64,000 nucleotides of DNA, from positions 1,141,782 through 1,205,781 of the forward strand of contig MCFH01000009.1 of assembly GCA_002104945.1 (NCBI GenBank), read 5' to 3'. Source of the DNA: Piromyces finnis finn. Its lineage: Eukaryota; Fungi; Neocallimastigomycota. Shown here piece by piece: positions 6,668 to 52,571 of this stretch; positions within the stretch are counted from its first letter, which is position 1; each line of letters begins with the position of its first letter. The position numbers and the translations under genes were made by a program. A model generated the notes under the pieces. It saw nothing but the letters and a program-made list of their open reading frames with translations, was not told the DNA's origin and ran no database searches.

Positions 6668-7417
6668 GTTTAAAAAAAATGAAAAAAAAAAAAAAAAAAA
6701 GCAACAACAAAAAAAACCCTATTGTGAATTATTGTCAAGTAATTAACTGATAAATATCTGCTTATCAATTTAATATTTGACACATATTAATAATAATAAG
6801 TAATTTAGATGTAAATATTACATATCATATAAATTACTTATTATAAACATTAGTATACATCAATTTATATAATACCATTTTAGGGGGATATCATTATATG
6901 AAAACCATATATCATTTTCATTCTCTATAATTTTCCTTTTAATAAAGTAATTTGCTATTTCCGTAGTATATATGGGTAAATATGAACAGCGGGGTATATT
7001 TATCTATATTTGAATAACAATTATTTTAATGAAAGTAATTATGAACAATTTTTATTTTAAATTGAATCAAAAATTTAATGTATATAATTATTTTATTATT
7101 GTTCATTTCATAATAAAAAATCATTTAGAATATAAAAAAAAAAAAAGATATATATGAAATATAATTTATTTTGATTCAATAACATTAAAAATAAAAAGGT
7201 ATTAGTAAAATTATTAATTAAAAAGTATTATTAATTACAAATTATTTAAACTTTTTTTTACATAATAGATTGGTTCGTAGTCAATAGTATTTGGTATTTT
7301 TAATTTATCTTCTTTCGCAATTACAATTTTTATAGGAATATTTCCATTAAAAACTTTTTCTCTTATTTTTTCAAAAGGATAATTAATTTCCTCAGTTACA
7401 TTATTATCATTGTCCAT
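5618..7417 (-). CDS. ATG5: Autophagy protein Atg5, multi-exon
   Basis: Spliced minus-strand exons give REKVFNGNIPIKI, INIPRCSYLPIY...DIWFSYNDIPLKW|HYAVGLLYDIF, PWEITIHFSDFP, and a C-terminal FILHGLNISIDTPLLWLGQYLSYPDNWLHIV followed by a stop at 5620-5618. All are Atg5 hallmarks. Confidence 0.93.
6523..6667. repeat. Interrupted (ATT)n microsatellite in an ATG5 intron
   Basis: ATT repeats with occasional GTT/ATGTTT interruptions. This run produces the spurious poly-L and poly-N ORFs in the track. Confidence 0.95.
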
Positions 7418-8340
7418 TATTTAAAACGTTATGTTAATTCTTTTTATTTTTTATTTCTATTTTATTATTTACTTCACTGTTCTTTTTTTTTTTAAAAAAA
7501 AAAAAAAAATAAAAAGAAAAGAATTACAGTATAAATAAAACTTTAAATAATAATAAAATAAACTTTATTAAATTTTGTTTTAATTAATATAAAAATAAAT
7601 AGATTTATTTAAATAAATAAAATATATAATTGATGAATGTGTGAAACATACATATATACAATAAAATATAAAATATTTCGAAGCATATTAAAAATCATAA
7701 TGTAATATTTTTATTTATGTTACATCATATATAAATTAGTATGACTTGACATTTATTTCAAAATCTTGTCACTTTTAAATTTTATATATTTTATAATTAT
7801 TATATTTAAAAATATTATTAAACATAATAATTACAAAAGCATTTAATATTATAAATAATAACAAAAAATAAGAATTCCAACTAAATCCTATATTTAAAAT
7901 AAAAAAAAATAAAAATAAAATAGTAATATAATAAAATACTCAGAAGTTATTAAAATTTAAAGAAAACTCTGAAGCTTAGAATGCTTTAGTTTTTAACTAT
8001 TATTATAAATGTCAGAAATATAGATTATATTAGATACCAAAATTTCGTTTATAATATGAAATAGAAGTCGAGGATCTCTATAGTATAAAATAGAGACATT
8101 AATTTCAATTATAAATATATAATTTTATTATTAACATACAATTTATAAAAAAAAATCGTATCTATTATATAATTATTTGATTAATTTTATAGAAAAATGA
8201 AAAATGAAAATAATAAAATAATTATAAATAAAGTTTATTTTTTGAATTATATATTAAATTAAAAGAATGTATTTAAATAATATTTTTTTTTTTTTTTTTA
8301 CTTTATTATAAGTATATTATATAAATAGAAATTAAGAAAT

Positions 8341-41754: not shown

Positions 41755-41798
41755 CAATAATAATAATAAACATAATAAACATAATAAACATAATAATA

Positions 41799-41891
<93 letters not shown>

Positions 41892-41910
41892 TAATAATAA
41901 TAATAATAAT
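41755..41910. repeat. (AAT)n microsatellite in the KNL1-BRCA2 divergent intergenic region
   Basis: Long AAT run seen directly. It causes the poly-L and poly-I ORFs at 41717 and 41742. Confidence 0.95.
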
Positions 41911-42088
41911 AAATAATCAATATAAAAATTATAAAATATGTAAATAAAGGTATAATAATAATAATAATAATAATAAATAATCAATATAAAAATTATAAAA
42001 TATGTAAATAAAGGTATAATAATAATAATAATAATAATAAATAATCAATATAAAAATTATAAAATATGTAAATAAAGGTATAATAATA
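41911..42088. repeat. Tandem repeat, 3 x 64 bp
   Basis: The unit AAATAATCAATATAAAAATTATAAAATATGTAAATAAAGGTAT(AAT)n starts at 41911, 41975 and 42039. Confidence 0.9.
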
Positions 42089-42755
42089 AAACTATCTAAT
42101 AAACGTAGTTTGTTTTTGACACAATTTAAAAAATATCCACGTTTTTTAATTAATTTAAATTAATACATAAATATATTATAATATTCATATAATATATTGC
42201 ATAATATATTGATTTAATTAATTTAATGGACAATAAAGATTTTGGAAAAAAAATAATTTCTTATTTTTTTCAAATAAAAATACCTTTTGCTATAACCAAT
42301 TATAAAAAGAAAATAATATATCATTAATTACATCCATAGATTTATATAATAGCTTTAATTACAATAAACAATTATATTTAAATAAATATTTTATATAATA
42401 AAATTTTAAAGAATTTATGCCTAATATTATAATATTTAAATTTAAAGTTTGGCAAAAAAAAAAGGCATAAAAAAATAAATTATAATAGTATAATAGAAAA
42501 AAATATATATTTAAAAAAAAGTATTGATAGAATTATTGTAATATTTTTTATTTATTTTTATTTATAAATATTACAATATATATTTATTTTGTCAAAATTT
42601 TATTTTGTTTTATTTAATTCTCAATAAAAATAATACGTACAATATAATATAATATAATATAAAAGAAAAGGTTAAGCAATTTTGTATTATTTCTTATTAT
42701 AAAAATATAGATTAAATTATAATCATTTTATTTTATGAAATAGAAAGATTATTAA

Positions 42756-45700
42756 ATGCTAAACTCTCATTCCGAAGAATATTGTTGTAAAGAAAATGAA
42801 ATTAAAAATTTTGATTCTGTATATATAATTAAACATAATTCAGTATGGAAAAACAATTGCGAATATGATTCTGGAAATAAGTTAAAAAAAAAGGTATTTG
42901 TTTAAAATATATATTTTAAATAATAAAGTTAGATAACTTATATAAATTTATTTTGTATTTATCAAATAAATTCTATTAAATTATTTTTAATTTTTTAAGC
43001 TTGATTCTTCAATAAAAAAAAATAATGAAAAAAACTTTGATAAAACAAATATAGTAAATGATGAAATATTAATTTATTTAAATAATGAAAAAGAATATTC
43101 GCAAGATAATGATAATTTGTGGCAAACAAGAAAAGGAATTACACCGATTAAAAATGAAATCTCAAAAAATCAAAAAAAAATTCATTTTGAAACTCCAAAA
43201 AATGGTAAAAATCAAATAATTAGAAAAAAATCATCATCATTAATGTCTTGTTTTCCTTCATCTCCTTCATCTCCTGTATATACAATATTAAATGGAAAAA
43301 ATGATTATCAAGTTTTATGGTCCCCTTCTATGGAAACACCAACTTTGAATCGTACAATTTCTCGAAATCCTTCAAATAAAATTAACTCAAATTTAGTATC
43401 CCCAGAGAATATAGATAAAAATAATTTTAAAAATTATGAAAGCAAAAGTAAATCATTAATTTCATTCACAACAAATATTCCAATAGAATTAGAAAAATCC
43501 CCACATAATATTACACATATCCTCTATAATAATAATACCCCAAAGAATAATTTGATATATGATAAATCAAACTTAACAACACCAGATTCGGTAGACACAA
43601 ATAAAACAAGAAAAGCAAAAAGTAGTATTTTAGAGCAGCTTTCTTTATTTAAAAATGCAATCAATGATAATAAGTATTTATCATCTCCTATGATATCACC
43701 AGATGATATAAAGAACATTAATAAAGACACTCTTATACCCTATCACTTTAGAAATTTGTTTTATACCAATAATAAAGAAAATACTACTACTACTACTACT
43801 ACTACTAATAATAATAATAATAATAAAAATGAAAAGGCAATAGAAATAAAATCCTCTGAAGTGAAATATCAAATGAAATCTCAAAATAAAAATGAATATT
43901 CCATTATTAATAAAAACGAGTCTACGAAAGAAATTAAACAAGAAATTTTGAAAGATAGAAATTTAGATTATAATGAACACCTTTCAATAGATTCTTTAGA
44001 TTCTTTGAATAAATCAAATCACCCTGAAAACAAAAGATCAATGGATTCTTTAAGTAAAGTTTTTTAATATATATATTTATATCAATAAATTTTGTAATTT
44101 TTTATTATTAATCTTGTTATTACTACTTTTTTTTATCATGTTATAAATATTAAAATGTTATTATAGCTGAAAATGTTGAAAGCCCAGCAAAAGAGTTAAA
44201 ATATTCTTATAATAAAAAAGATTACAATAAAATATATAAACCCAAATCACCAACATTCACAGATGATGAGTTAGTGCTTTTAACACCTGAAAATAAAAAA
44301 CATAAAACGAAACGTCATCATAAGCATTCATGTAAAAAAAAGAAAAGAGCATGTTCTCAGAATACTGAATTAGAAGCTACCCCAAAATTAAAAAGAACAA
44401 AGTATATTTCAATTGAAGATTATAGTGACAGTGAAGATAGTAATTTTATTAGTTTTCCATCTACAAATTATATTAGAACAACACCTAAAATAAAAAATTG
44501 CTATAATAAAGAATTGCTATATAATGAGTATGATATCCAAAATGAAAAGAATGATTTAAATGAATTAAGTGATACTCAATCCAATCTGATAAGAGAAAAT
44601 AATAAAAAAGAAAATTCTAAAATTGATTTATTGAATTCAGATTCATTAAAAGATATTTATAATATTTTTGATAATGATTCTGTGTTGGATTTAATTAATT
44701 TAGACGATGAAGATCGAAAATCATTCTTAGAAACACCTAGAATAAAAAAAATTTACGGAGTAAATGATAATGAATTAACTAGTTCACTATTAGTAGTACA
44801 AGATTCATCTATCAGTAATAAAAACGTTAATTCAAATGATAATTTTGAATCCTTTGATTATGGCTCAGATAACATAGATTATAATATGGTTAAAGAAAAC
44901 CATATAATTACACAAGCATATAGCCTTTTGGATCAAAATAATAATATTAAGGAAAGATCAATTAACAGTCATTTAAATAATTCAGATTTTAATGACAATA
45001 ACATGCTTACTCAAAAAGAAAATATAAATATTGATAATCATATTAATGAACTAACAAATTTTTATAATGAATTTAATGAAACAGTTCTCTCATCAAATAA
45101 AAATAAAAATTTAGTTAATTCTATTAATAATATAAAAAAACAAAAATCGGAATTAGAAAGTGATTTTGAATTGGTATTAAATGAAATAGCTAATCAAGAT
45201 TATTCATTATTTGATGAAGATAATAGTAATTTGATTCAAGAAATAATTAAAAAAGATGAAGTAAAGGAGATAGATAAAGAGCTTTTGAAGAGTGAAAAAA
45301 ATAGTAACAAAAAGCCAGTGATTATTTATAAGGATGAAAATGATTATATTAAAGGAAGTGGTTATCCTTATAAAGAAATAACATTAGATCAAACAAATGA
45401 AGGAAATAATAATGTTTTAGATAATTCCTTAATTTATGAAGATTCATTACCAATGCCACCTATAATCTTAGATGAAAATAATTACATAAAAAGTAAACTA
45501 GAAAAAATAACTTTTAATGGGGATAAAAATACATTAACAAAAATATCTGAAAATAATTCAGAAAGTCTTAATGTTAGAGAATCATTAATTGAACTAGAAA
45601 ATCATAATAATAAATTATCTAATGATATGAGTAAACCTAATTTAAAAAAAGTTAGTAAAAATCTGAATAATGAAGATGTCATTAAACAGTACATATCAAA

Positions 45701-48700
45701 ATCAAAAATGAAAACAATATCTGAAAAGAAAATTGAGAGAACTAACAAGATTTTTGATGCTAATTTATTTGATACCAATGAAAAACTAAAGTCTAATTAT
45801 ACAATTGAATTTGTAGGATTTAAGACAGGAAATGGAAAACAATTACCAAAATTATCAAAAGAAGCAATTAGTAATGCTAAAAAGATACTAGGAGATGATT
45901 TATTTGATGATATAGAAATGAAAACTGGAAATAATGAATTGAAATCGGAATCAATTGAATTTGTAGGATTTAAGACAGGACATGGAAAACAATTACCAAA
46001 ATTATCAAAAGAAGCAATTAGTAATGCTAAAAAAATACTAGGAGATGATTTATTTGATGATATAGAAATGAAAACTGAAAATAATGAATTGAAATCAGAA
46101 TCAACTGAATTTGTAGGATTTAAGACAGGAAATGGAAAACAATTACCAAAATTATCAAAAGAAGCAATTAGTAATGCTAAAAAGATACTAGGAGATGATT
46201 TATTTGATGATATAGAAATGAAAACTGGAAATAATGAATTGAAATCGGAATCAATTGAATTTGTAGGATTTAAGACAGGAAATGGAAAACAATTACCAAA
46301 ATTATCAAAAGAAGCAATTAATGATGCCAGAAAGATACTAGGAGATGATTTATTTGATGATATAGAAATGAAAACTGAAAATAATGAATTGAAATCAGAA
46401 TCAACTGAATTTGTAGGATTTAAGACAGGAAATGGAAAACAATTACCAAAATTATCAAAAGAAGCAATTAATAATGCTAAAAAGATACTAGGAGATGATT
46501 TATTTGATGATATAGAAATGAAAACTGAAAATAATGAATTGAAATCAGAATCAACTGAATTTGTAGGATTTAAGACAGGAAATGGAAAACAATTACCAAA
46601 ATTATCAAAAGAAGCAATTAGTAATGCTAAAAAGATACTAGGAGATGATTTATTTGATGATATAGAAATGAAAACTGGAAATAATGAATTGAAATCGGAA
46701 TCAATTGAATTTGTAGGATTTAAGACAGGAAATGGAAAACAATTACCAAAATTATCAAAAGAAGCAATTAATGATGCCAGAAAGATACTAGGAGATGATT
46801 TATTTGATGATATAGAAATGAAAACTGAAAATAATGAATTGAAATCAGAATCAACTGAATTTGTAGGATTTAAGACAGGAAATGGAAAACAATTACCAAA
46901 ATTATCAAAAGAAGCAATTAATGATGCCAGAAAGATACTAGGAGATGATTTATTTGATGATATAGAAATGAAAACTGAAAATAATGAATTGAAATCAGAA
47001 TCAACTGAATTTGTAGGATTTAAGACAGGAAATGGAAAACAATTACCAAAATTATCAAAAGAAGCAATTAGTAATGCTAAAAAGATACTAGGAGATGATT
47101 TATTTGATGATATAGAAATGAAAACTGAAAATAATGAATTGAAATCAGAATCAACTGAATTTGTAGGATTTAAGACAGGAAATGGAAAACAATTACCAAA
47201 ATTATCAAAAGAAGCAATTAATGATGCCAGAAAGATACTAGGAGATGATTTATTTGATGATATAGAAATGAAAACTGAAAATAATGAATTGAAATCAGAA
47301 TCAACTGAATTTGTAGGATTTAAGACAGGAAATGGAAAACAATTACCAAAATTATCAAAAGAAGCAATTAATAATGCTAAAAATATACTAGGAGATGATT
47401 TATTTGATGATATAGAAATGAAAACTGAAAATAGGGAATCGAAACTTGGATCAATGCGATATATAAATAATATTAATAATCAGAAGGAAGCCATTAAACA
47501 AAGATCTAAGAAAATCATTATAGGTAATTATAATATAATAAATAATAGATGAAAATTTAATAATTTAAATTAATATTAAAATTTGTTTAATTACAATATT
47601 TTATATATAGAAAATAATACCCCAAAACCAGTAATAAATCAATCTATAAAAATTATTAATAATAAAATATTTAAGAGAGTTTGTAATAATAATAAAGAAA
47701 ATGTATATAACGAAAATGAAAAAAATCAAAAGGATAAAAGTAATTTGAAGAGGAATAAATTGAAAGAAAATAATATTAATAATTTTTCAAAAAGATATAT
47801 CAGCAACAAAAAAAGCTCACTTAATAAAAATTTTAATGATAATAATGACGATATCATAAAACCATTACATACTATTAACAAAAATAATAGTAATATATTG
47901 AAACCAAATTCTGTATTACCGTATGAATTATATATATATAATTTATATAGATAAGAAAAATTATTAATATATTATTAAATTAATAATTATATTTTATTAA
48001 TATATACATATTAATTATTATCTTTAATATAAAAAGGAAAACATATAAAATCAACAACAACAACAATAATAATAATAATAATGATAATAATAAAGAAATT
48101 CTAAAACAGATTATTGGAGTGAGCGTAAATAATAAAATATCTCGACTATTGAACAAAAAGAAATTATTAAGTAATAGACCATTTAAATCGCCGTTAATAG
48201 TTAAACCTATAGAGAATTCATCACTTCAAGATAATATTAATATTAATACTAATAATCAACAAAATAAATTAATAAAGGATAAAAATTGGATTGATATAAA
48301 AAAATATGGTAATTATTGGCAACTAAAAATAAAAATAATAATTAAAAATGAAGTGAATATTTATTTATTTTTTTTTTTTTTTTTTTTTTTTTTTATTTTA
48401 TTTTAAGAAAATAAAAGATCATTAGCAGAAATATTTAGATTTTTACCTCAAAACTTCTCACAAAAGCATATCGAAAAAATATTGTACGGAATTATTAATA
48501 ATAAAAATTATAATAAAGTTGTATCAATACTAATTAAAAATAACATTATAATTTAGATGTAAAGATATTGCAATAATGAATCCACAAATAGCTTTGGATT
48601 ATCGTTTTAAACTCAATAATACTGAAAGTTGGGGAAGTAAAGAAGCATACGAAGAATTAAAGAAATATAATGTTAATACAAATATTGCAACAAAAGATTG

Positions 48701-51700
48701 GGTTGATAATCATTATAAATGGATTATTTGGAAAATAGCTTCAATGGTTCGTACAGAAAATTCTTTGTATGAAGAATATTGGAATAAAGAAAAAATAATA
48801 GAACAACTTCTTTATAGGTATAGTAAATATATTTATTATAATTAATATATTAATAGTAATACATTTAATAACATTATATATTATATATACTAGATATAAT
48901 AAAGAAAATAACTTAAGAAAACACTCTGCATTAAAATTAATAATTGAAAGGGATAATATATCCACAAAATATATGATTTTATGTGTATCAAATATTATAA
49001 TGAATAAGAAGAATGAAAATGGTATATTTTAATTTATAAGAAATTATTAACTCTAAATAAATGAATATAATAATAAAATTAAATATTTATTATAGATAAT
49101 GAAAATGAAACTACAAAAGAACATGAAATATATTTAGAGCTAACTGATGGATGGTATTCAATTAATGCTCAAATTGATAATATTTTACAAGATGCTGTTA
49201 AAGATAAGAAAATTTTCATTGGTCAAAAACTTTGTATTTCTGGTGCTAAATTAATTGGTTCAAATGACCCATTACCTGTTCTTGAGGTTAATGATGCTGT
49301 AAGATTAAATTTAGTTGCTAATAGTACAAGAATTGCTAAATGGGATACTAAATTAGGCTATCAAAATTATAAATCTTTTAAAATTTCCTTAAACTACATT
49401 CAACCATTTGGAGGTCAAGTGTCTATGATAGATGTTATAATCATAAAAAAATATTCTATATGTTATTCTGAAAAGATGAACAATGGTTCTTATATACTTA
49501 GAAATCAGTTTGAAGAAGAAATAGAGGAGGAAATTTTAAATAATATGAAAATGAAACAGTTTCAAAATGAAATCGATAATTATAATAAATTAAGTGAAAA
49601 TAAAAGTAAAAAAATAAAGAACTCAAGAAAATTAACAATGAAAGAACTTGAAAATTTGTCAAATGGAGAAGATTTATATGAAGAAATGGAAAAATATGCA
49701 GATACTTATTATTTTCTAAATATATTGTCAGAATATCAAAGAAGAATATTGAATGAATTTATTAATGAAAAGAAAACAATAGAATTCGAAAATATCAAAA
49801 ATGACTTTTTGAAGAAAACAAATAAAATTAATCATAAAAGAAATGTTTCCTCATTTCTTCGATTAAAGATATGTGATTATTTCACTAAAAATAAAAAAAA
49901 CTATGAAAAAAAATACGTTTACTTAACAATTTGGAATCCAAATATAAAAATTATTAATAATATAAATGAAGGGAAAAGATATCAAATATTTTATCCAAAA
50001 GCTAAACCAGAAAATAATGAAATGAAATATTCATTATCTTTAAACAATTTAAATAATATTTTTGAAAAACCAATTGAAGATGAAATTGTTAAAAATACAC
50101 TTTATAAACCAAGAGAGTTAATGCCATTTAACAGCTTTGCATCTTTAACGATAGGATCAGAAATTGATGTAGTAGCTTATTGTTTAGGTATATAAATAAT
50201 ATATATATATTATCATTATTCAATCATTAAATGTTTTTAAAAAATATTTTCATTATTATATTAGCAATACATGATCTTGATTCAGATAATAACAAAATGC
50301 CATTAAAATACATATGTATTTTATCTGACAATACTCAAAACTTTTTAATTGTTGAAGTTACATCAAATGTGAAATTACTAAGAAAACGTCAAAATGTAAG
50401 CATTTAAAGAACAATATATTATTAAAAATTATGACTCAAAATGCATGTTATATATGTATATTAATATTTATTGTTTTTAATATATTATAGTTTCAAGAAC
50501 CTATTTTTATCAGAAATTTAAAAATCAAAGGGTTTAACGAATCATGCAATTTATTTATAAGTTGTATTAATATGTACACTGAGGTTAAATCACATTCTTC
50601 TTTAAATTACGAAAAAGAAAAATACGAGATATTGAAAAATTGGTCAAAAACGTATGTAGTATATAAATTATAATTTTTAATTTATAAAGAAAAATAATTT
50701 TAAATATTGAGTTCTCATGTTTTATTTTTTAAATATATATTTATATAAAAAAATGTGCTCTATTAATATACTTTATTAATAATTAATATTAATAATTAAG
50801 TAATCAAAAAGATTTTAATGATCAAAAGCTAAAATCTGAAGAAATTTTAAATTATATTATTAACCCTTATGCCTCAAAGCCAATAATCAATAATAATATA
50901 TATAATATTAATTCAATATCACCACCAGTTCCAAAAAGAAATATGTTATTACATTCCTTTAACAATAATGAAAATAATAAAAGGATTTTAAATAAAATAC
51001 CAGAATTACTCGATATTGCAAAACTAGCATCTAATACTAATGAACAACTTGATTTGATAAATAAAATTGATAATCGTTTATATAATTGTCCTATTAATAA
51101 TCCATTAAAGCATAACTATAATAACAATAATTGTATTAATAATAATGCTATTAAAAATTATTTGCATTCATATCCATCCAAAATTCCAATTCAAGATAAT
51201 AATGAATATTTAGAAAGAGATATTCATTTAAAAGAATGGATTCGGAAAAGTATAAATTGTGGAACCTTCTCTATATATGCACATCTAATAGATCTTAATA
51301 TAAATTATAATAACCCAGAAAAATATATAAATTTTAAGAGTTCTCTTACCTCATCAAGTATTCATAATTCTCCAAACAAACCACAATTTACATTAATTTT
51401 TGACAATGGAGAAAATACTTGGAATATAGAATTAAGCGAAGAACAATTCTTATCCTTTATTTCAATGAAAAACGGAGAGAAATCGGGATGTTATCATAGT
51501 ATTGATGATAATTTCTATAAAGATGTTCTCATATATTTAAATAAATTGTTCAAGAAACAATCATTAAATATTTCATTTGATCCATTCAAAAATGATACCC
51601 ACAAGAAGAAATTAAATTCTATAATTAATGAATTATTAAAGGAAAATGATATCTCACCTAAAAATCAAATAATTACAGTAAGTTTTTTTAATGATATCAT

Positions 51701-52571
51701 TGATCAACTATATTATTATGGTATATTAGATATTGAGAATGCTGAAGTATATGAAGAAGATAAAGACTTTGAATATAACACTATCCCAATGAATCAGGAT
51801 ACTTCTTCACTCATTTCATATAAAGAAAATAAAGATGGAATTTTAAATAAAAACGAGCCAAAGGAATCGAATCAAACAAATATAAAAATAGAAAACAATA
51901 ATAGACCTCTTTGGTGGAATGAAGGTGTTTTAAATGCTTTTGAGAGTTTTAGAATAAAACTTTGGGATTCTTATCAAATAAGAAATAAAATGTCAAAAGA
52001 TGAATTTATTGTATGGACAATAAGATTTGGGAAAATTATAAAAGATGAAGATTTATGGAATAAATTTAATTCCTGGATTCAAGAGAAAAAAAGGTTCCCT
52101 GAAGAAACATCTTCCACTATTAATACAGAAATCTATAATAAGAATTATAAAAAAGGAACTAATGAAAATGAAAACATCTTTGAACGTGATGATTTTGAAG
52201 TATTTGAATCTTTTATGAGTGAACTATTATTACAGTATATCAATAATAATGATACAATACAAACAAATACAATACCACCATTGCTATTATTCTATGAAAA
52301 GGAATGGGACTATTTGATCAAATTAATTATTCAATGGTTAAAAGAATCTGAATTTAAAGTAAGTTTATAACTTAAAAAATAATATTTTATTAATTTAGAA
52401 TATATATCTAATAATAAATGTATTTAAAATATTTTTATTTTTTTATAGTTAATCCTATTAAAAGAAAAAACAATACAATCTCTATCAAATAATCTTATAC
52501 ATAAATTTGTTTCAATTCATAGAATTAATAATGACAACTATTTAAACAAACTTTTAAATGAGCTAACTTAA
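42756..52571 (+). CDS. BRCA2: BRCA2 orthologue, about 13 exons and roughly 2,900 aa: long disordered N-terminus, 11 BRC repeats, helical domain, OB1-tower-OB2-OB3, and a C-terminal extension
   Basis: The track ORFs at 43117, 44274, 47583, 48119, 48576, 49419 and 50943 appear to belong to one spliced gene. I checked the in-frame junctions 42893/43000, 44053/44167, 47523/47611, 50651/50801 and 52359/52449. DNA-binding-domain motifs: KDWVDNHYKWIIWKIASM, IIEQLLYRYNKE..LRKHSALKLIIERD, YLELTDGWYSINAQID, KIFIGQKLCISGAKL, LVANSTRIAKWDTKLG, and GGQVSMIDVIIIKKY. Confidence 0.93.
45804..47432 (+). repeat. Coding tandem array, 11 x 150 bp (50 aa) BRC repeats
   Basis: The unit EFVGFKTGNGKQLPKLSKEAISNAKKILGDDLFDDIEMKTENNELKSEST recurs with an exact 150-bp period (for example AATTACCAAAATTATCAAAA at 45841, 45991, ... 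47341). Confidence 0.97.

What the first reader, a model, noticed from the sequence alone, without database searches (positions are those of the whole stretch)
45804..47432. Fungal BRCA2 with an expanded array of 11 near-identical BRC repeats
Eleven head-to-tail 150-bp units differ at only a few nucleotides. The best-studied fungal BRCA2 (Ustilago Brh2) has a single BRC repeat, and human BRCA2 has eight divergent, widely spaced ones. A tight homogeneous tandem array is known from Trypanosoma brucei BRCA2. This looks like an independent, recent expansion of RAD51-loading modules in a very AT-rich, repeat-rich genome, and may reflect unusual recombination demands.
Basis: partly seen in the sequence, partly recalled or inferred. 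Interest (0 to 1): 0.8.

Follow-up and report, generated by a model that had tools for sequence, protein, structure and literature searches.

The report
Gut-fungus BRCA2 with 11 BRC repeats
The DNA-repair gene BRCA2 of the rumen fungus Piromyces finnis really carries eleven almost identical copies of the module that binds the recombinase RAD51, but its anaerobic-fungus relatives carry similar arrays of 7 to 15 copies, so this is a family trait kept uniform by copy-to-copy recombination, not a one-off.

Summary
Window 45804-47453 holds eleven in-frame 150-bp units, 96% alike, and each one scores as a Pfam BRCA2 (BRC) repeat.

They lie in exon 3 of a 13-exon gene (42756-52571, + strand). This gene is the public Piromyces finnis model BCR36DRAFT_410443, 2886 aa, named only "hypothetical protein". 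It is a full BRCA2 orthologue with a helical domain, OB1, OB2 with tower, and OB3.

- **Not specific to this genome.** Anaeromyces robustus, Neocallimastix californiae and two metagenomic gut fungi carry 7, 10, 15 and 12 full units at the same place in the gene.
- **Concerted evolution.** Units cluster by species. The 35-residue core is under purifying selection, while the linkers share no conserved positions.
- **Older than the species.** Decayed units at the 5' edge of three relatives suggest the array predates the split of these genera.
- **Outside the clade.** A chytrid (Synchytrium) has four tandem units.

The assembly is PacBio-only. RAD51 binding, and any link to unusual recombination demands, remain inference.

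No paper in the library covers BRCA2 in anaerobic fungi. The scan has not noted this on other DNA. I file it as a new member of a known kind, of moderate interest.

The parts
42756..52571 (+). BRCA2 orthologue: 13 exons, 2886 aa, public model BCR36DRAFT_410443 (P0008), stop TAA at 52569-52571
   Evidence: P0008 maps exon by exon to the window with exact peptide matches. The introns are 73-149 bp, GT..AG, GC 6-15%.
44169..47522 (+). Exon 3 (residues 399-1516), which holds the whole BRC array
   Evidence: It is an open frame with no stop.
45708..45773 (+). Possible decayed half-unit (second BRC module only, no FxxG) just upstream of the array
   Evidence: A weak match to positions 13-34 of my HMM of anaerobic-fungus units (i-E 0.55). 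It is suggestive only. Clearer relics are seen in the relatives.
45804..47453 (+). Array of 11 tandem 150-bp (50-aa) units. Each is a 35-aa BRC core (FKTGNGK ... ILGDDLFDD) plus a 15-aa acidic, Asn-rich linker
   Evidence: each unit scores 75-78 bits against the clade HMM.
47304..47453 (+). Unit 11, the most divergent (8 nt from consensus, mostly at its 3' end): the edge unit of the array
48407..48821 (+). BRCA2 helical domain (exons 6-7)
   Evidence: PF09169 matches at E 8.8e-12 on the exon piece and 2.6e-11 on P0008. It is aligned to the rat and mouse structures.
48925..49364 (+). OB1 (exons 8-9)
   Evidence: PF09103 matches at E 3.2e-40 on residues 1834-1955.
49374..50081 (+). OB2 with the long helical tower insertion
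   Evidence: PF21318 gives a weak hit. phmmer aligns this region to rat BRCA2 1iyj_B through the tower. The AF2 model has two long helices at model residues 304-338 and 379-412, between the strands.
50154..50867 (+). OB3 (end of exon 9 to start of exon 12, across three introns)
   Evidence: AF2 strands at model residues 522-607 have pLDDT about 85-90. The model aligns to 1iyj_B at Z 27.3 over 514 residues, out to chain residue 3115. RPA70 tandem OB folds align on model residues 260-640. The Pfam OB3 hit alone is only E 0.085.
50868..52568 (+). C-terminal about 540 residues with no recognised domain
   Evidence: No Pfam family matches. The region is conserved in N. californiae and in the other loci.

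Best explanation
This is the single BRCA2 gene of Piromyces finnis. Its exon 3 encodes eleven head-to-tail 50-residue units. Each unit is a 35-residue BRC core followed by a 15-residue flexible linker.

By homology with human, Ustilago and trypanosome BRCA2, each core should hold one RAD51 (or DMC1) monomer. It would do so by mimicking the recombinase's own FxxA oligomerisation motif; here the motif reads FKTG. A second hydrophobic patch (ILGD and/or LFDD) would add a second contact. One BRCA2 molecule could then carry up to eleven recombinase monomers to single-stranded DNA, which is bound by the C-terminal helical, OB1, OB2-tower and OB3 domain. This step is inferred.

The array is not a private novelty. 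A multi-unit tandem BRC array sits at the same position in every anaerobic gut fungus examined, with 7-15 full units. Unequal crossing-over and gene conversion keep the units of each species alike, which is concerted evolution. Units at the 5' edge escape this and decay. Selection keeps the BRC core and leaves the linker free. The P. finnis array is the most homogeneous of the five, so its last rounds of duplication and conversion, including a recent block duplication of units 3-4 as units 6-7, are very recent.
For: - **Array and BRC identity:**
- **Full BRCA2 architecture:** the public 2886-aa model maps exactly to the window. OB1 matches at E 3e-40 and the helical domain at E 3e-11. phmmer against rat BRCA2 gives E 1e-68. 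The AF2 model (pLDDT 80.9) aligns to 1iyj_B at Z 27.3 and 1mje_A at Z 26.2.
- **Single locus:**
- **Orthologous arrays at DNA level:** A. robustus 150 bp x 6.7 at 93%; N. californiae 147 bp x 9.7 at 95%, with the same RasGAP gene downstream; JGI metagenome 153 bp x 14.5 at 89%; ENA metagenome 168 bp x 10.8 at 70%.
- **Full units by a clade HMM:** 11, 7, 10, 15 and 12, plus 4, 4 and 2 decayed upstream units in A. robustus, JGI and ENA.
- **Same position in the gene:** the flanking blocks are collinear in all orthologues.
- **Concerted evolution:** mean core identity inside the P. finnis array is 0.975, against 0.75-0.83 to the other species. [quoted passage not shown]
- **Constraint on the core:** pN/pS between species consensus cores is 0.10-0.35. 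The linkers share no conserved positions.
- **Partners present:** RAD51 with FTTA and a DMC1 orthologue.
- **Repeat number matters elsewhere:** T. brucei (PMC2408642) and mouse (PMC12803100).
Against:
- In T. brucei the genome assembly predicted 15 repeats where PCR found 11.
- No binding test or complex model could be run.
- The Ala of FxxA, reported as critical in mouse BRC repeats, is Gly in every unit.
- The spacing from the conserved Gly to the conserved Ala is 13 residues, not the 12 of the strict consensus.
- A unit tree that groups units by species fits parallel independent expansions as well as concerted evolution. The case for an ancestral array rests on the shared position and the decayed 5' units.
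- Only five anaerobic-fungus loci were available, and two are from unnamed metagenomic organisms.
Confidence: 0.8

Rival explanations
1. Assembly artefact. The true array is much shorter or longer, and the eleven copies reflect mis-assembly of near-identical 150-bp units.
For: The T. brucei genome assembly over-counted its BRC repeats, giving 15 where PCR found 11. The exact 300-bp duplicate (units 3-4 = units 6-7) is the kind of structure that can mislead an assembler. I could not lay reads on the stretch.
Against: The P. finnis assembly was made from PacBio reads only, from fragments over 10 kb, with Falcon and Quiver (PMC5622200). A 1.65-kb array lies well inside single reads. The units carry an ordered, non-periodic set of variants. 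Four independent assemblies of relatives show 7-15 units.
Confidence: 0.1
2. Neutral coding minisatellite. One BRC repeat would suffice, and the extra copies are a selectively irrelevant by-product of a genome prone to slippage and unequal crossing-over. The copy number simply drifts.
For: The copy number varies from 7 to 15 between relatives. Edge units decay. Other coding long-period repeats occur in this genome, and earlier scan notes report unequal recombination elsewhere in it (unchecked). [quoted passage not shown] Differences within the array are too few to show selection.
Against: Every one of the 55 full units in the five lineages keeps an intact core, with no stop or frameshift. The core is under purifying selection between species while the linkers share no conserved positions. 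No lineage examined has fewer than 7 full units. In T. brucei and mouse, repeat number affects recombination efficiency or stress tolerance.
Confidence: 0.25
3. One reading: an independent, recent expansion specific to this species, driven by its own unusual recombination demands.
For: The P. finnis array is the most homogeneous of the five (96% against 70-95%). It has almost no decayed upstream units. So much of its present content is young.
Against: Arrays of similar size sit at the same gene position in four other anaerobic fungi. Nothing links the array to a species-specific demand.
Confidence: 0.1
4. The units are BRC-derived but no longer bind RAD51. Because of FxxG and the altered spacing, they serve another role, such as DMC1-only binding or acting as a disordered acidic spacer.
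For: Ala is replaced by Gly in all units, and Ala is reported as critical in mouse BRC repeats. The DMC1 orthologue itself has FITG where human DMC1 has FLTA, while RAD51 keeps FTTA.
Against: The published BRC fingerprint allows Gly at that position, and FxxG occurs in other fungal BRCA2 proteins (PMC10684384). Pfam scores are well above the cut-off. These are the only BRC repeats in the only BRCA2 gene of a genome that has RAD51.
Confidence: 0.1

Closest known systems
Trypanosoma brucei BRCA2 (Hartley and McCulloch 2008, PMC2408642)
   Same: Both have a head-to-tail array of BRC units with a fixed period that includes the linker (44 aa there, 50 aa here). In both, the units are nearly identical at the nucleotide level, the last unit is the divergent one, and there are 11-15 copies.
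   Different: In trypanosomes the expansion is confined to T. brucei; T. vivax has 1 repeat, and T. congolense has 3 predicted or 2 found by PCR. Here all five anaerobic fungi examined have 7-15 units. The T. brucei units differ by less than one base per repeat, while these differ by 0-4 from the consensus (8 in unit 11). Strain polymorphism and a functional dose effect are shown there and are untested here.
Human and mouse BRCA2 (8 BRC repeats; DNA-binding domain structures 1iyj, 1miu, 1mje)
   Same: The overall plan is the same: BRC repeats in one large exon, then a helical domain, OB1, OB2 with tower, and OB3 (Z 25-27 to the solved domain). The BRC fingerprint Fx[ST][AG]xG is shared.
   Different: The mammalian repeats are divergent and widely spaced, whereas these are tandem and homogeneous. 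The motif is FxxG instead of FxxA. There is one extra residue between the two BRC modules and an additional conserved LFDD after the core.
Basidiomycete Brh2 (Ustilago maydis, Naganishia liquefaciens, Cryptococcus; PMC10684384)
   Same: These are fungal BRCA2 orthologues with a helical domain, OB1, and OB2 with tower. FxxG-type BRC motifs occur in them too.
   Different: They have 1-3 BRC repeats and are reported to lack OB3. The P. finnis protein has 11 repeats, and its model shows a third OB fold.
Trichomonas vaginalis BRCA2 (P0082) and Synchytrium microbalum BRCA2 (P0010)
   Same: Both have several BRC units in close tandem: 14 units with a period of about 35 aa in Trichomonas, and four units with a 46-aa period in Synchytrium.
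   Different: Their units are clearly more diverged from each other at the protein level. They score only 5-10 bits against the anaerobic-fungus unit HMM, so these are separate arrays rather than the same one.

Membership tests
BRCA2 orthologue | At least one BRC repeat scoring over the Pfam PF00634 threshold | tested here: met
   There are 11 stretches at E 5.2e-51. A single unit scores 26.5 bits against a cut-off of 20.3.
BRCA2 orthologue | BRC fingerprint Fx[ST][AG]xG (intermediate consensus of Lo et al. 2003, as quoted in PMC10684384) | tested here: met
   It is met in 11 of 11 units, as FKTGNG, or FKTGHG in unit 2.
BRCA2 orthologue | Strict fingerprint Fx[ST][AG]xG-x(12)-[ASV], with FxxA and the second hydrophobic tetrad 17 residues apart | tested here: not met
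   Reading the units, the conserved Ala follows the Gly after 13 residues, and the ILGD tetrad follows FKTG after 18. That is one extra residue. FxxA is FxxG.
BRCA2 orthologue | C-terminal DNA-binding domain: helical domain, OB1, OB2 with tower | tested here: met
   PF09169 matches at E 2.6e-11 and PF09103 at E 3.2e-40. phmmer to rat BRCA2 gives E 1.1e-68 across OB2 and the tower. Structural Z is 27.3.
BRCA2 orthologue | Third OB fold (OB3), as in animals and plants | tested here: met
   The AF2 strands at model residues 522-607 are confident. The alignment runs to the last residues of 1iyj_B and 1mje_A. Sequence alone is weak: Pfam E 0.085 and no PDB hit for the piece alone. So this rests on a predicted structure.
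BRCA2 orthologue | Binds RAD51 and/or DMC1 through the BRC repeats, and binds DSS1 through the DNA-binding domain | not testable with these tools
   RAD51 and DMC1 genes exist in the genome. No complex prediction or assay is available here. DSS1 was not searched for.
T. brucei-type homogeneous tandem BRC array | Head-to-tail units of constant length, nearly identical at the DNA level, with a divergent terminal unit | tested here: met
   The period is 150 bp, with 96% matches and 0% indels. Unit 11 is the most divergent.
T. brucei-type homogeneous tandem BRC array | Expansion absent from close relatives (a recent, lineage-specific event) | tested here: not met
   Four other anaerobic-fungus orthologues carry 7-15 full units at the same position.
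T. brucei-type homogeneous tandem BRC array | Copy number varies between alleles and strains, and the real copy number is confirmed independently of the assembly | not testable with these tools
Only one P. finnis assembly is available.

The most novel reading that the evidence does not exclude
Large FxxG-type BRC arrays (7-15 units) are an adaptive, clade-wide trait of strictly anaerobic gut fungi. On this reading they are needed to load or stabilise RAD51, and a DMC1 that itself carries FxxG, in genomes of about 20% GC that are packed with microsatellites which stall replication forks. If so, high BRC number serves replication-stress tolerance rather than oxidative-stress tolerance, which would be a natural counter-example to the recent mouse-based proposal in PMC12803100. 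The 7-to-15 spread between genera would then be a natural dose series.
Probability: 0.15. Interest if true: 0.7.

Novelty: new member of a known kind. Interest (0 to 1): 0.45.

Why it matters
Why BRCA2 proteins carry from one to fifteen BRC repeats is an open question. So far the only well-studied homogeneous tandem array is that of T. brucei.

The anaerobic gut fungi add a whole clade in which such arrays persist, turn over and vary in size (7-15). The recombinase-binding core is visibly conserved while the linker is not. That gives a comparative series for asking whether repeat number is selected.

It also corrects two generalisations about fungal BRCA2: that it has few BRC repeats, and that it lacks OB3.

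These fungi are strict anaerobes. Their large arrays therefore sit awkwardly with the idea that multiple repeats are kept mainly to cope with oxidative stress.

The practical limits are real:
- The gene is already a public model, though unnamed.
- The fungi are hard to manipulate genetically.
- Nothing here shows binding, dose effect or adaptation.

Tried and rejected
1. **Read-level check of copy number and splicing.** So there is no read evidence on copy number, splicing or expression. I sent no DNA of those places to any search tool afterwards. The public protein record P0008 was used as a database record.
2. **Exon joining.** The spliced protein used is the database record P0008, which a tool returned. 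Window pieces were searched exon by exon.
3. **PDB sequence search with two units.** It gave only chance hits to ribosomal protein S5 (E about 1.3). The BRC4 peptide of 1n0w was not found, so there is no residue-by-residue mapping onto a solved BRC-RAD51 complex.
4. **PDB sequence search with the OB3 piece alone.** Nothing relevant was found. OB3 rests on the predicted structure.
5. **Third word search, with the array and its flanks.** No hit at E <= 1e-10 in the 343-1090 aa range.
6. **Pfam SAM_PNT, MLLE and Cac1_C hits on the array.** I rejected these as summed weak matches over repeats, because no single stretch passes.
7. **Large representative-protein search.** The protein is not open, and I make no claim that rests on absence of relatives beyond the sampled loci.
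8. **Selection among the eleven units.** Only about 10 variable sites exist (roughly 7 non-synonymous, 3 synonymous), too few to tell from neutrality.
9. **Literature.** No paper in the library combines BRCA2 with Neocallimastigomycota or anaerobic fungi in a relevant way. None combines BRC repeats with concerted evolution.
Full report
**1. Observation**

Tandem Repeats Finder reports a single strong array at 45802-47444: period 150 bp, 11.0 copies, 96% matches, no indels, score 3055.

The array lies inside a 1132-codon open frame, 44154-47549 on the + strand. Read in that frame, it is eleven 50-residue units, starting at 45804 and then every 150 bp up to 47304-47453.
- The units differ from their consensus at 0-4 positions; the last unit differs at 8, mostly at its 3' end.
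- Units 3 and 6, 4 and 7, and 8 and 10 are identical over all 150 bp. So units 3-4 recur as an exact 300-bp block at units 6-7.
- There are no stops or frameshifts.

A DNA search of the whole 56.46-Mb, 232-contig assembly finds the unit only at this locus. A six-frame search with the Pfam BRC model also finds only this locus.

As a baseline I ran TRF on 264 kb of the same genome, made of twenty 10-kb samples from four contigs plus the window. Coding long-period repeats do occur, for example 315 bp x 4.5 at 69%, 87 bp x 3.6 at 95% and 99 bp x 3.2 at 94%. Nothing approaches this array.

**2. What the units are**

Pfam PF00634 (BRCA2 repeat) matches the open frame in eleven stretches at E 5.2e-51. 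A single unit scores 26.5 bits against a curated cut-off of 20.3.
- Each unit has the BRC fingerprint Fx[ST][AG]xG, here FKTGNG, or FKTGHG in unit 2.
- That is followed by a conserved LPKLSKEA block, a conserved Ala, a hydrophobic pair (IL) with GD, and a further LFDD.
- Compared with the strict published consensus quoted in PMC10684384, there is one extra residue between the two modules.
- The Ala of FxxA is Gly in every unit. The same paper notes that both FxxA and FxxG occur in fungal BRCA2.

The Pfam hits to SAM_PNT, MLLE and Cac1_C are summed weak matches over the repeats. No single stretch passes, so I discount them.

**3. The gene**

A word search with the N. californiae homologue returned a 2886-aa protein, "hypothetical protein BCR36DRAFT_410443 [Piromyces finnis]". 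UniRef names it "BRCA2 OB1 domain-containing protein". Its contig is 1,205,781 bp long, which is exactly the contig and end coordinate of this window.

The protein maps to the window by exact peptide matches in 13 exons, from 42756 to 52568 with a TAA stop following. The introns are 73-149 bp, begin with GT, end with AG, and have 6-15% GC. The array lies wholly in exon 3, 44169-47522.

Downstream of the array the protein has the following domains:
- the BRCA2 helical domain (E 2.6e-11);
- OB1 (E 3.2e-40);
- a weak OB2 match.

phmmer aligns residues 1763-2231 to rat BRCA2 (1iyj_B) at E 1.1e-68, through OB2 and its tower.

An AlphaFold2 model of residues 1700-2420, built on a 25-sequence alignment, has mean pLDDT 80.9 and pTM 0.73.
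- It aligns to 1iyj_B at Z 27.3 (rmsd 4.1 Å, 514 residues) and to 1mje_A at Z 26.2.
- The alignment runs from the helical domain to the last residues of the crystallised fragment.
- Tandem OB folds of RPA70 align on model residues 260-640.

So the protein has a complete animal-type DNA-binding domain, including a third OB fold. That last point rests on a predicted structure. Sequence alone gives only Pfam OB3 at E 0.085 and nothing for the piece on its own.

**4. Relatives**

The word search with the array region found four anaerobic-fungus proteins: A. robustus, N. californiae, and one each from a JGI and an ENA metagenome. I fetched their DNA.

So the loci are syntenic.

| Source | Locus | Period x copies | % matches | Full units (50 bits or more) | Decayed upstream units |
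|---|---|---|---|---|---|
| P. finnis | window | 150 bp x 11.0 | 96 | 11 | 1 doubtful half-unit |
| A. robustus | L010 | 150 bp x 6.7 | 93 | 7 | 4 |
| N. californiae | L011 | 147 bp x 9.7 | 95 | 10 | 0 |
| JGI metagenome | L012 | 153 bp x 14.5 | 89 | 15 | 4 |
| ENA metagenome | L013 | 168 bp x 10.8 | 70 | 12 | 2 |

The period, copy and match figures come from TRF. The unit counts come from an HMM I built from the 35-residue cores. Most of the decayed upstream units lack the FxxG module.

In every orthologue the array lies between the same conserved N-terminal block and the same conserved post-array block.

**5. How the array evolves**

- Mean nucleotide identity of the 105-nt cores is 0.975 within P. 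finnis, and 0.93, 0.96, 0.89 and 0.78 within the other four arrays. Between P. finnis and the other species it is 0.75-0.83.
- Fourteen of the fifteen JGI units form the sister group of the P. finnis units. The two long-branch outliers are edge units.
- Between species consensus cores, pN/pS is 0.10-0.35.
- The 14-21-residue linkers share composition (acidic, Asn- and Lys-rich) but no conserved positions.

This is the pattern expected of an array that is homogenised within each lineage by unequal crossing-over and gene conversion, with selection on the BRC core only.

A tree of this kind cannot by itself separate concerted evolution from parallel expansions. Three things make an ancestral multi-unit array the better reading:
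- the shared position in the gene;
- the shared period of about 150 bp;
- the decayed 5' units in three lineages.

The P. finnis array is the most homogeneous. It contains an exact two-unit block duplication, so its latest turnover is very recent.

**6. Outside the clade**

- The chytrid Synchytrium microbalum BRCA2 has four tandem 46-residue BRC units plus two or three others.
- Ambispora (Glomeromycotina) has three spaced units.
- Trichomonas vaginalis has 14 closely packed, more divergent units, as reported earlier.
- Basidiomycete Brh2 proteins have 1-3.

The closest published parallel is T. brucei BRCA2:
- Its genome sequence predicts 15 units of 44 residues, of which 14 are identical and the last is degenerate.
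- Its close relatives have 1-3 repeats.
- Copy number differs between strains.
- The genome assembly over-counted: 15 predicted against 11 found by PCR.

**7. Partners**

The genome has a RAD51 gene at contig C156:1476943-1478505, minus strand. It has the canonical GFTTA oligomerisation motif.

There is also a second recombinase gene at C158:226549-228181. Its exon pieces match human DMC1 far better than RAD51, at 72 against 39 bits. At the oligomerisation motif it reads GFITG where human DMC1 reads GFLTA. I note that this matches the FKTG of the BRC units, but I did not pursue it.

**8. Mechanism**

What is shown:
- BRC identity of the units;
- a full BRCA2 architecture;
- a single locus;
- arrays across the clade;
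- constraint on the core.

What is inferred, from the established model for BRCA2, is how it works. On that model each BRC core binds one recombinase monomer by mimicking its FxxA motif and adding a second hydrophobic contact (summarised in PMC10684384 and PMC11229353). One molecule could then carry up to eleven monomers to ssDNA held by the OB folds.

Whether number matters here is untested. In T. brucei, reducing the number lowers recombination efficiency. In mouse, a single repeat supports viability but fails under oxidative stress. Anaerobic gut fungi are strict anaerobes with 7-15 repeats, so oxidative stress is an unlikely reason for their arrays.

**9. What could not be done**

One DNA run and three probable RNA runs hold most of the stretch. 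Copy number, expression and splicing are therefore unverified at read level.

I sent no DNA of those places to any search tool afterwards. The database protein P0008 was used in family and structure searches.

The published account of the assembly makes a gross error in a 1.65-kb array unlikely but not excluded. It was PacBio only, from fragments over 10 kb, assembled with Falcon, FinisherSC and Quiver, giving 232 contigs (PMC5622200).

**10. Verdict**

The claim of a recent expansion private to this genome is not supported: the array is a trait of the anaerobic gut fungi, kept homogeneous within each species.

The gene is already a public, unnamed model. No paper in the searchable library discusses BRCA2 in these fungi. 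I rate it a new member of a known kind, with moderate interest (0.45).

Noticed in passing
window 50154-50867 (P0008 residues about 2219-2349): The predicted structure shows a third OB fold aligned to OB3 of rat and mouse BRCA2 (Z 26-27 for the whole domain). Ambispora BRCA2 also gives a weak Pfam OB3 hit (E 0.0024). A 2023 paper generalised from Basidiomycota that fungal BRCA2 lacks OB3.
   Followed up: partly
G000:C158:226549-228181 (+), locus L014: The DMC1 orthologue (72 bits to human DMC1 against 39 to RAD51) has GFITG at the oligomerisation motif where human DMC1 has GFLTA. RAD51 at C156:1476943-1478505 (-) keeps GFTTA. All BRC units of anaerobic fungi read FKTG. A complete DMC1 gene is also notable in fungi with no described sexual cycle.
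   Followed up: partly
L010:11342-12561 (Anaeromyces robustus orthologous locus): A 1.2-kb (AAT)n run of about 404 copies sits between the BRC array and the DNA-binding domain. The public annotation splits BRCA2 there into two models: P0003 of 1478 aa and a 1034-aa product.
   Followed up: no
L011:6228-9506 (Neocallimastix californiae orthologous locus): The genomic open frame holds 10 BRC units, but the public 'partial' model P0004 has only 8 and lacks the N-terminal exons, which are present upstream at L011:4746-5753. This looks like an annotation problem caused by the repeats and by an (ATA)n run at 7417-7708.
   Followed up: partly
window 41756-42089: An AT-only tandem repeat (AAT runs with a 64-bp higher-order period, 4-5 copies) lies about 700 bp upstream of the BRCA2 start codon.
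   Followed up: no
P0010 residues 1112-1325 (Synchytrium microbalum BRCA2): This chytrid BRCA2 carries four tandem 46-residue BRC units (GGFATAKGAPLPISDAA...). One of them has an internal 7-residue duplication. A more divergent unit sits just upstream.
   Followed up: partly
The tool itself says the filter can trip by chance. I worked beside them.
   Followed up: no
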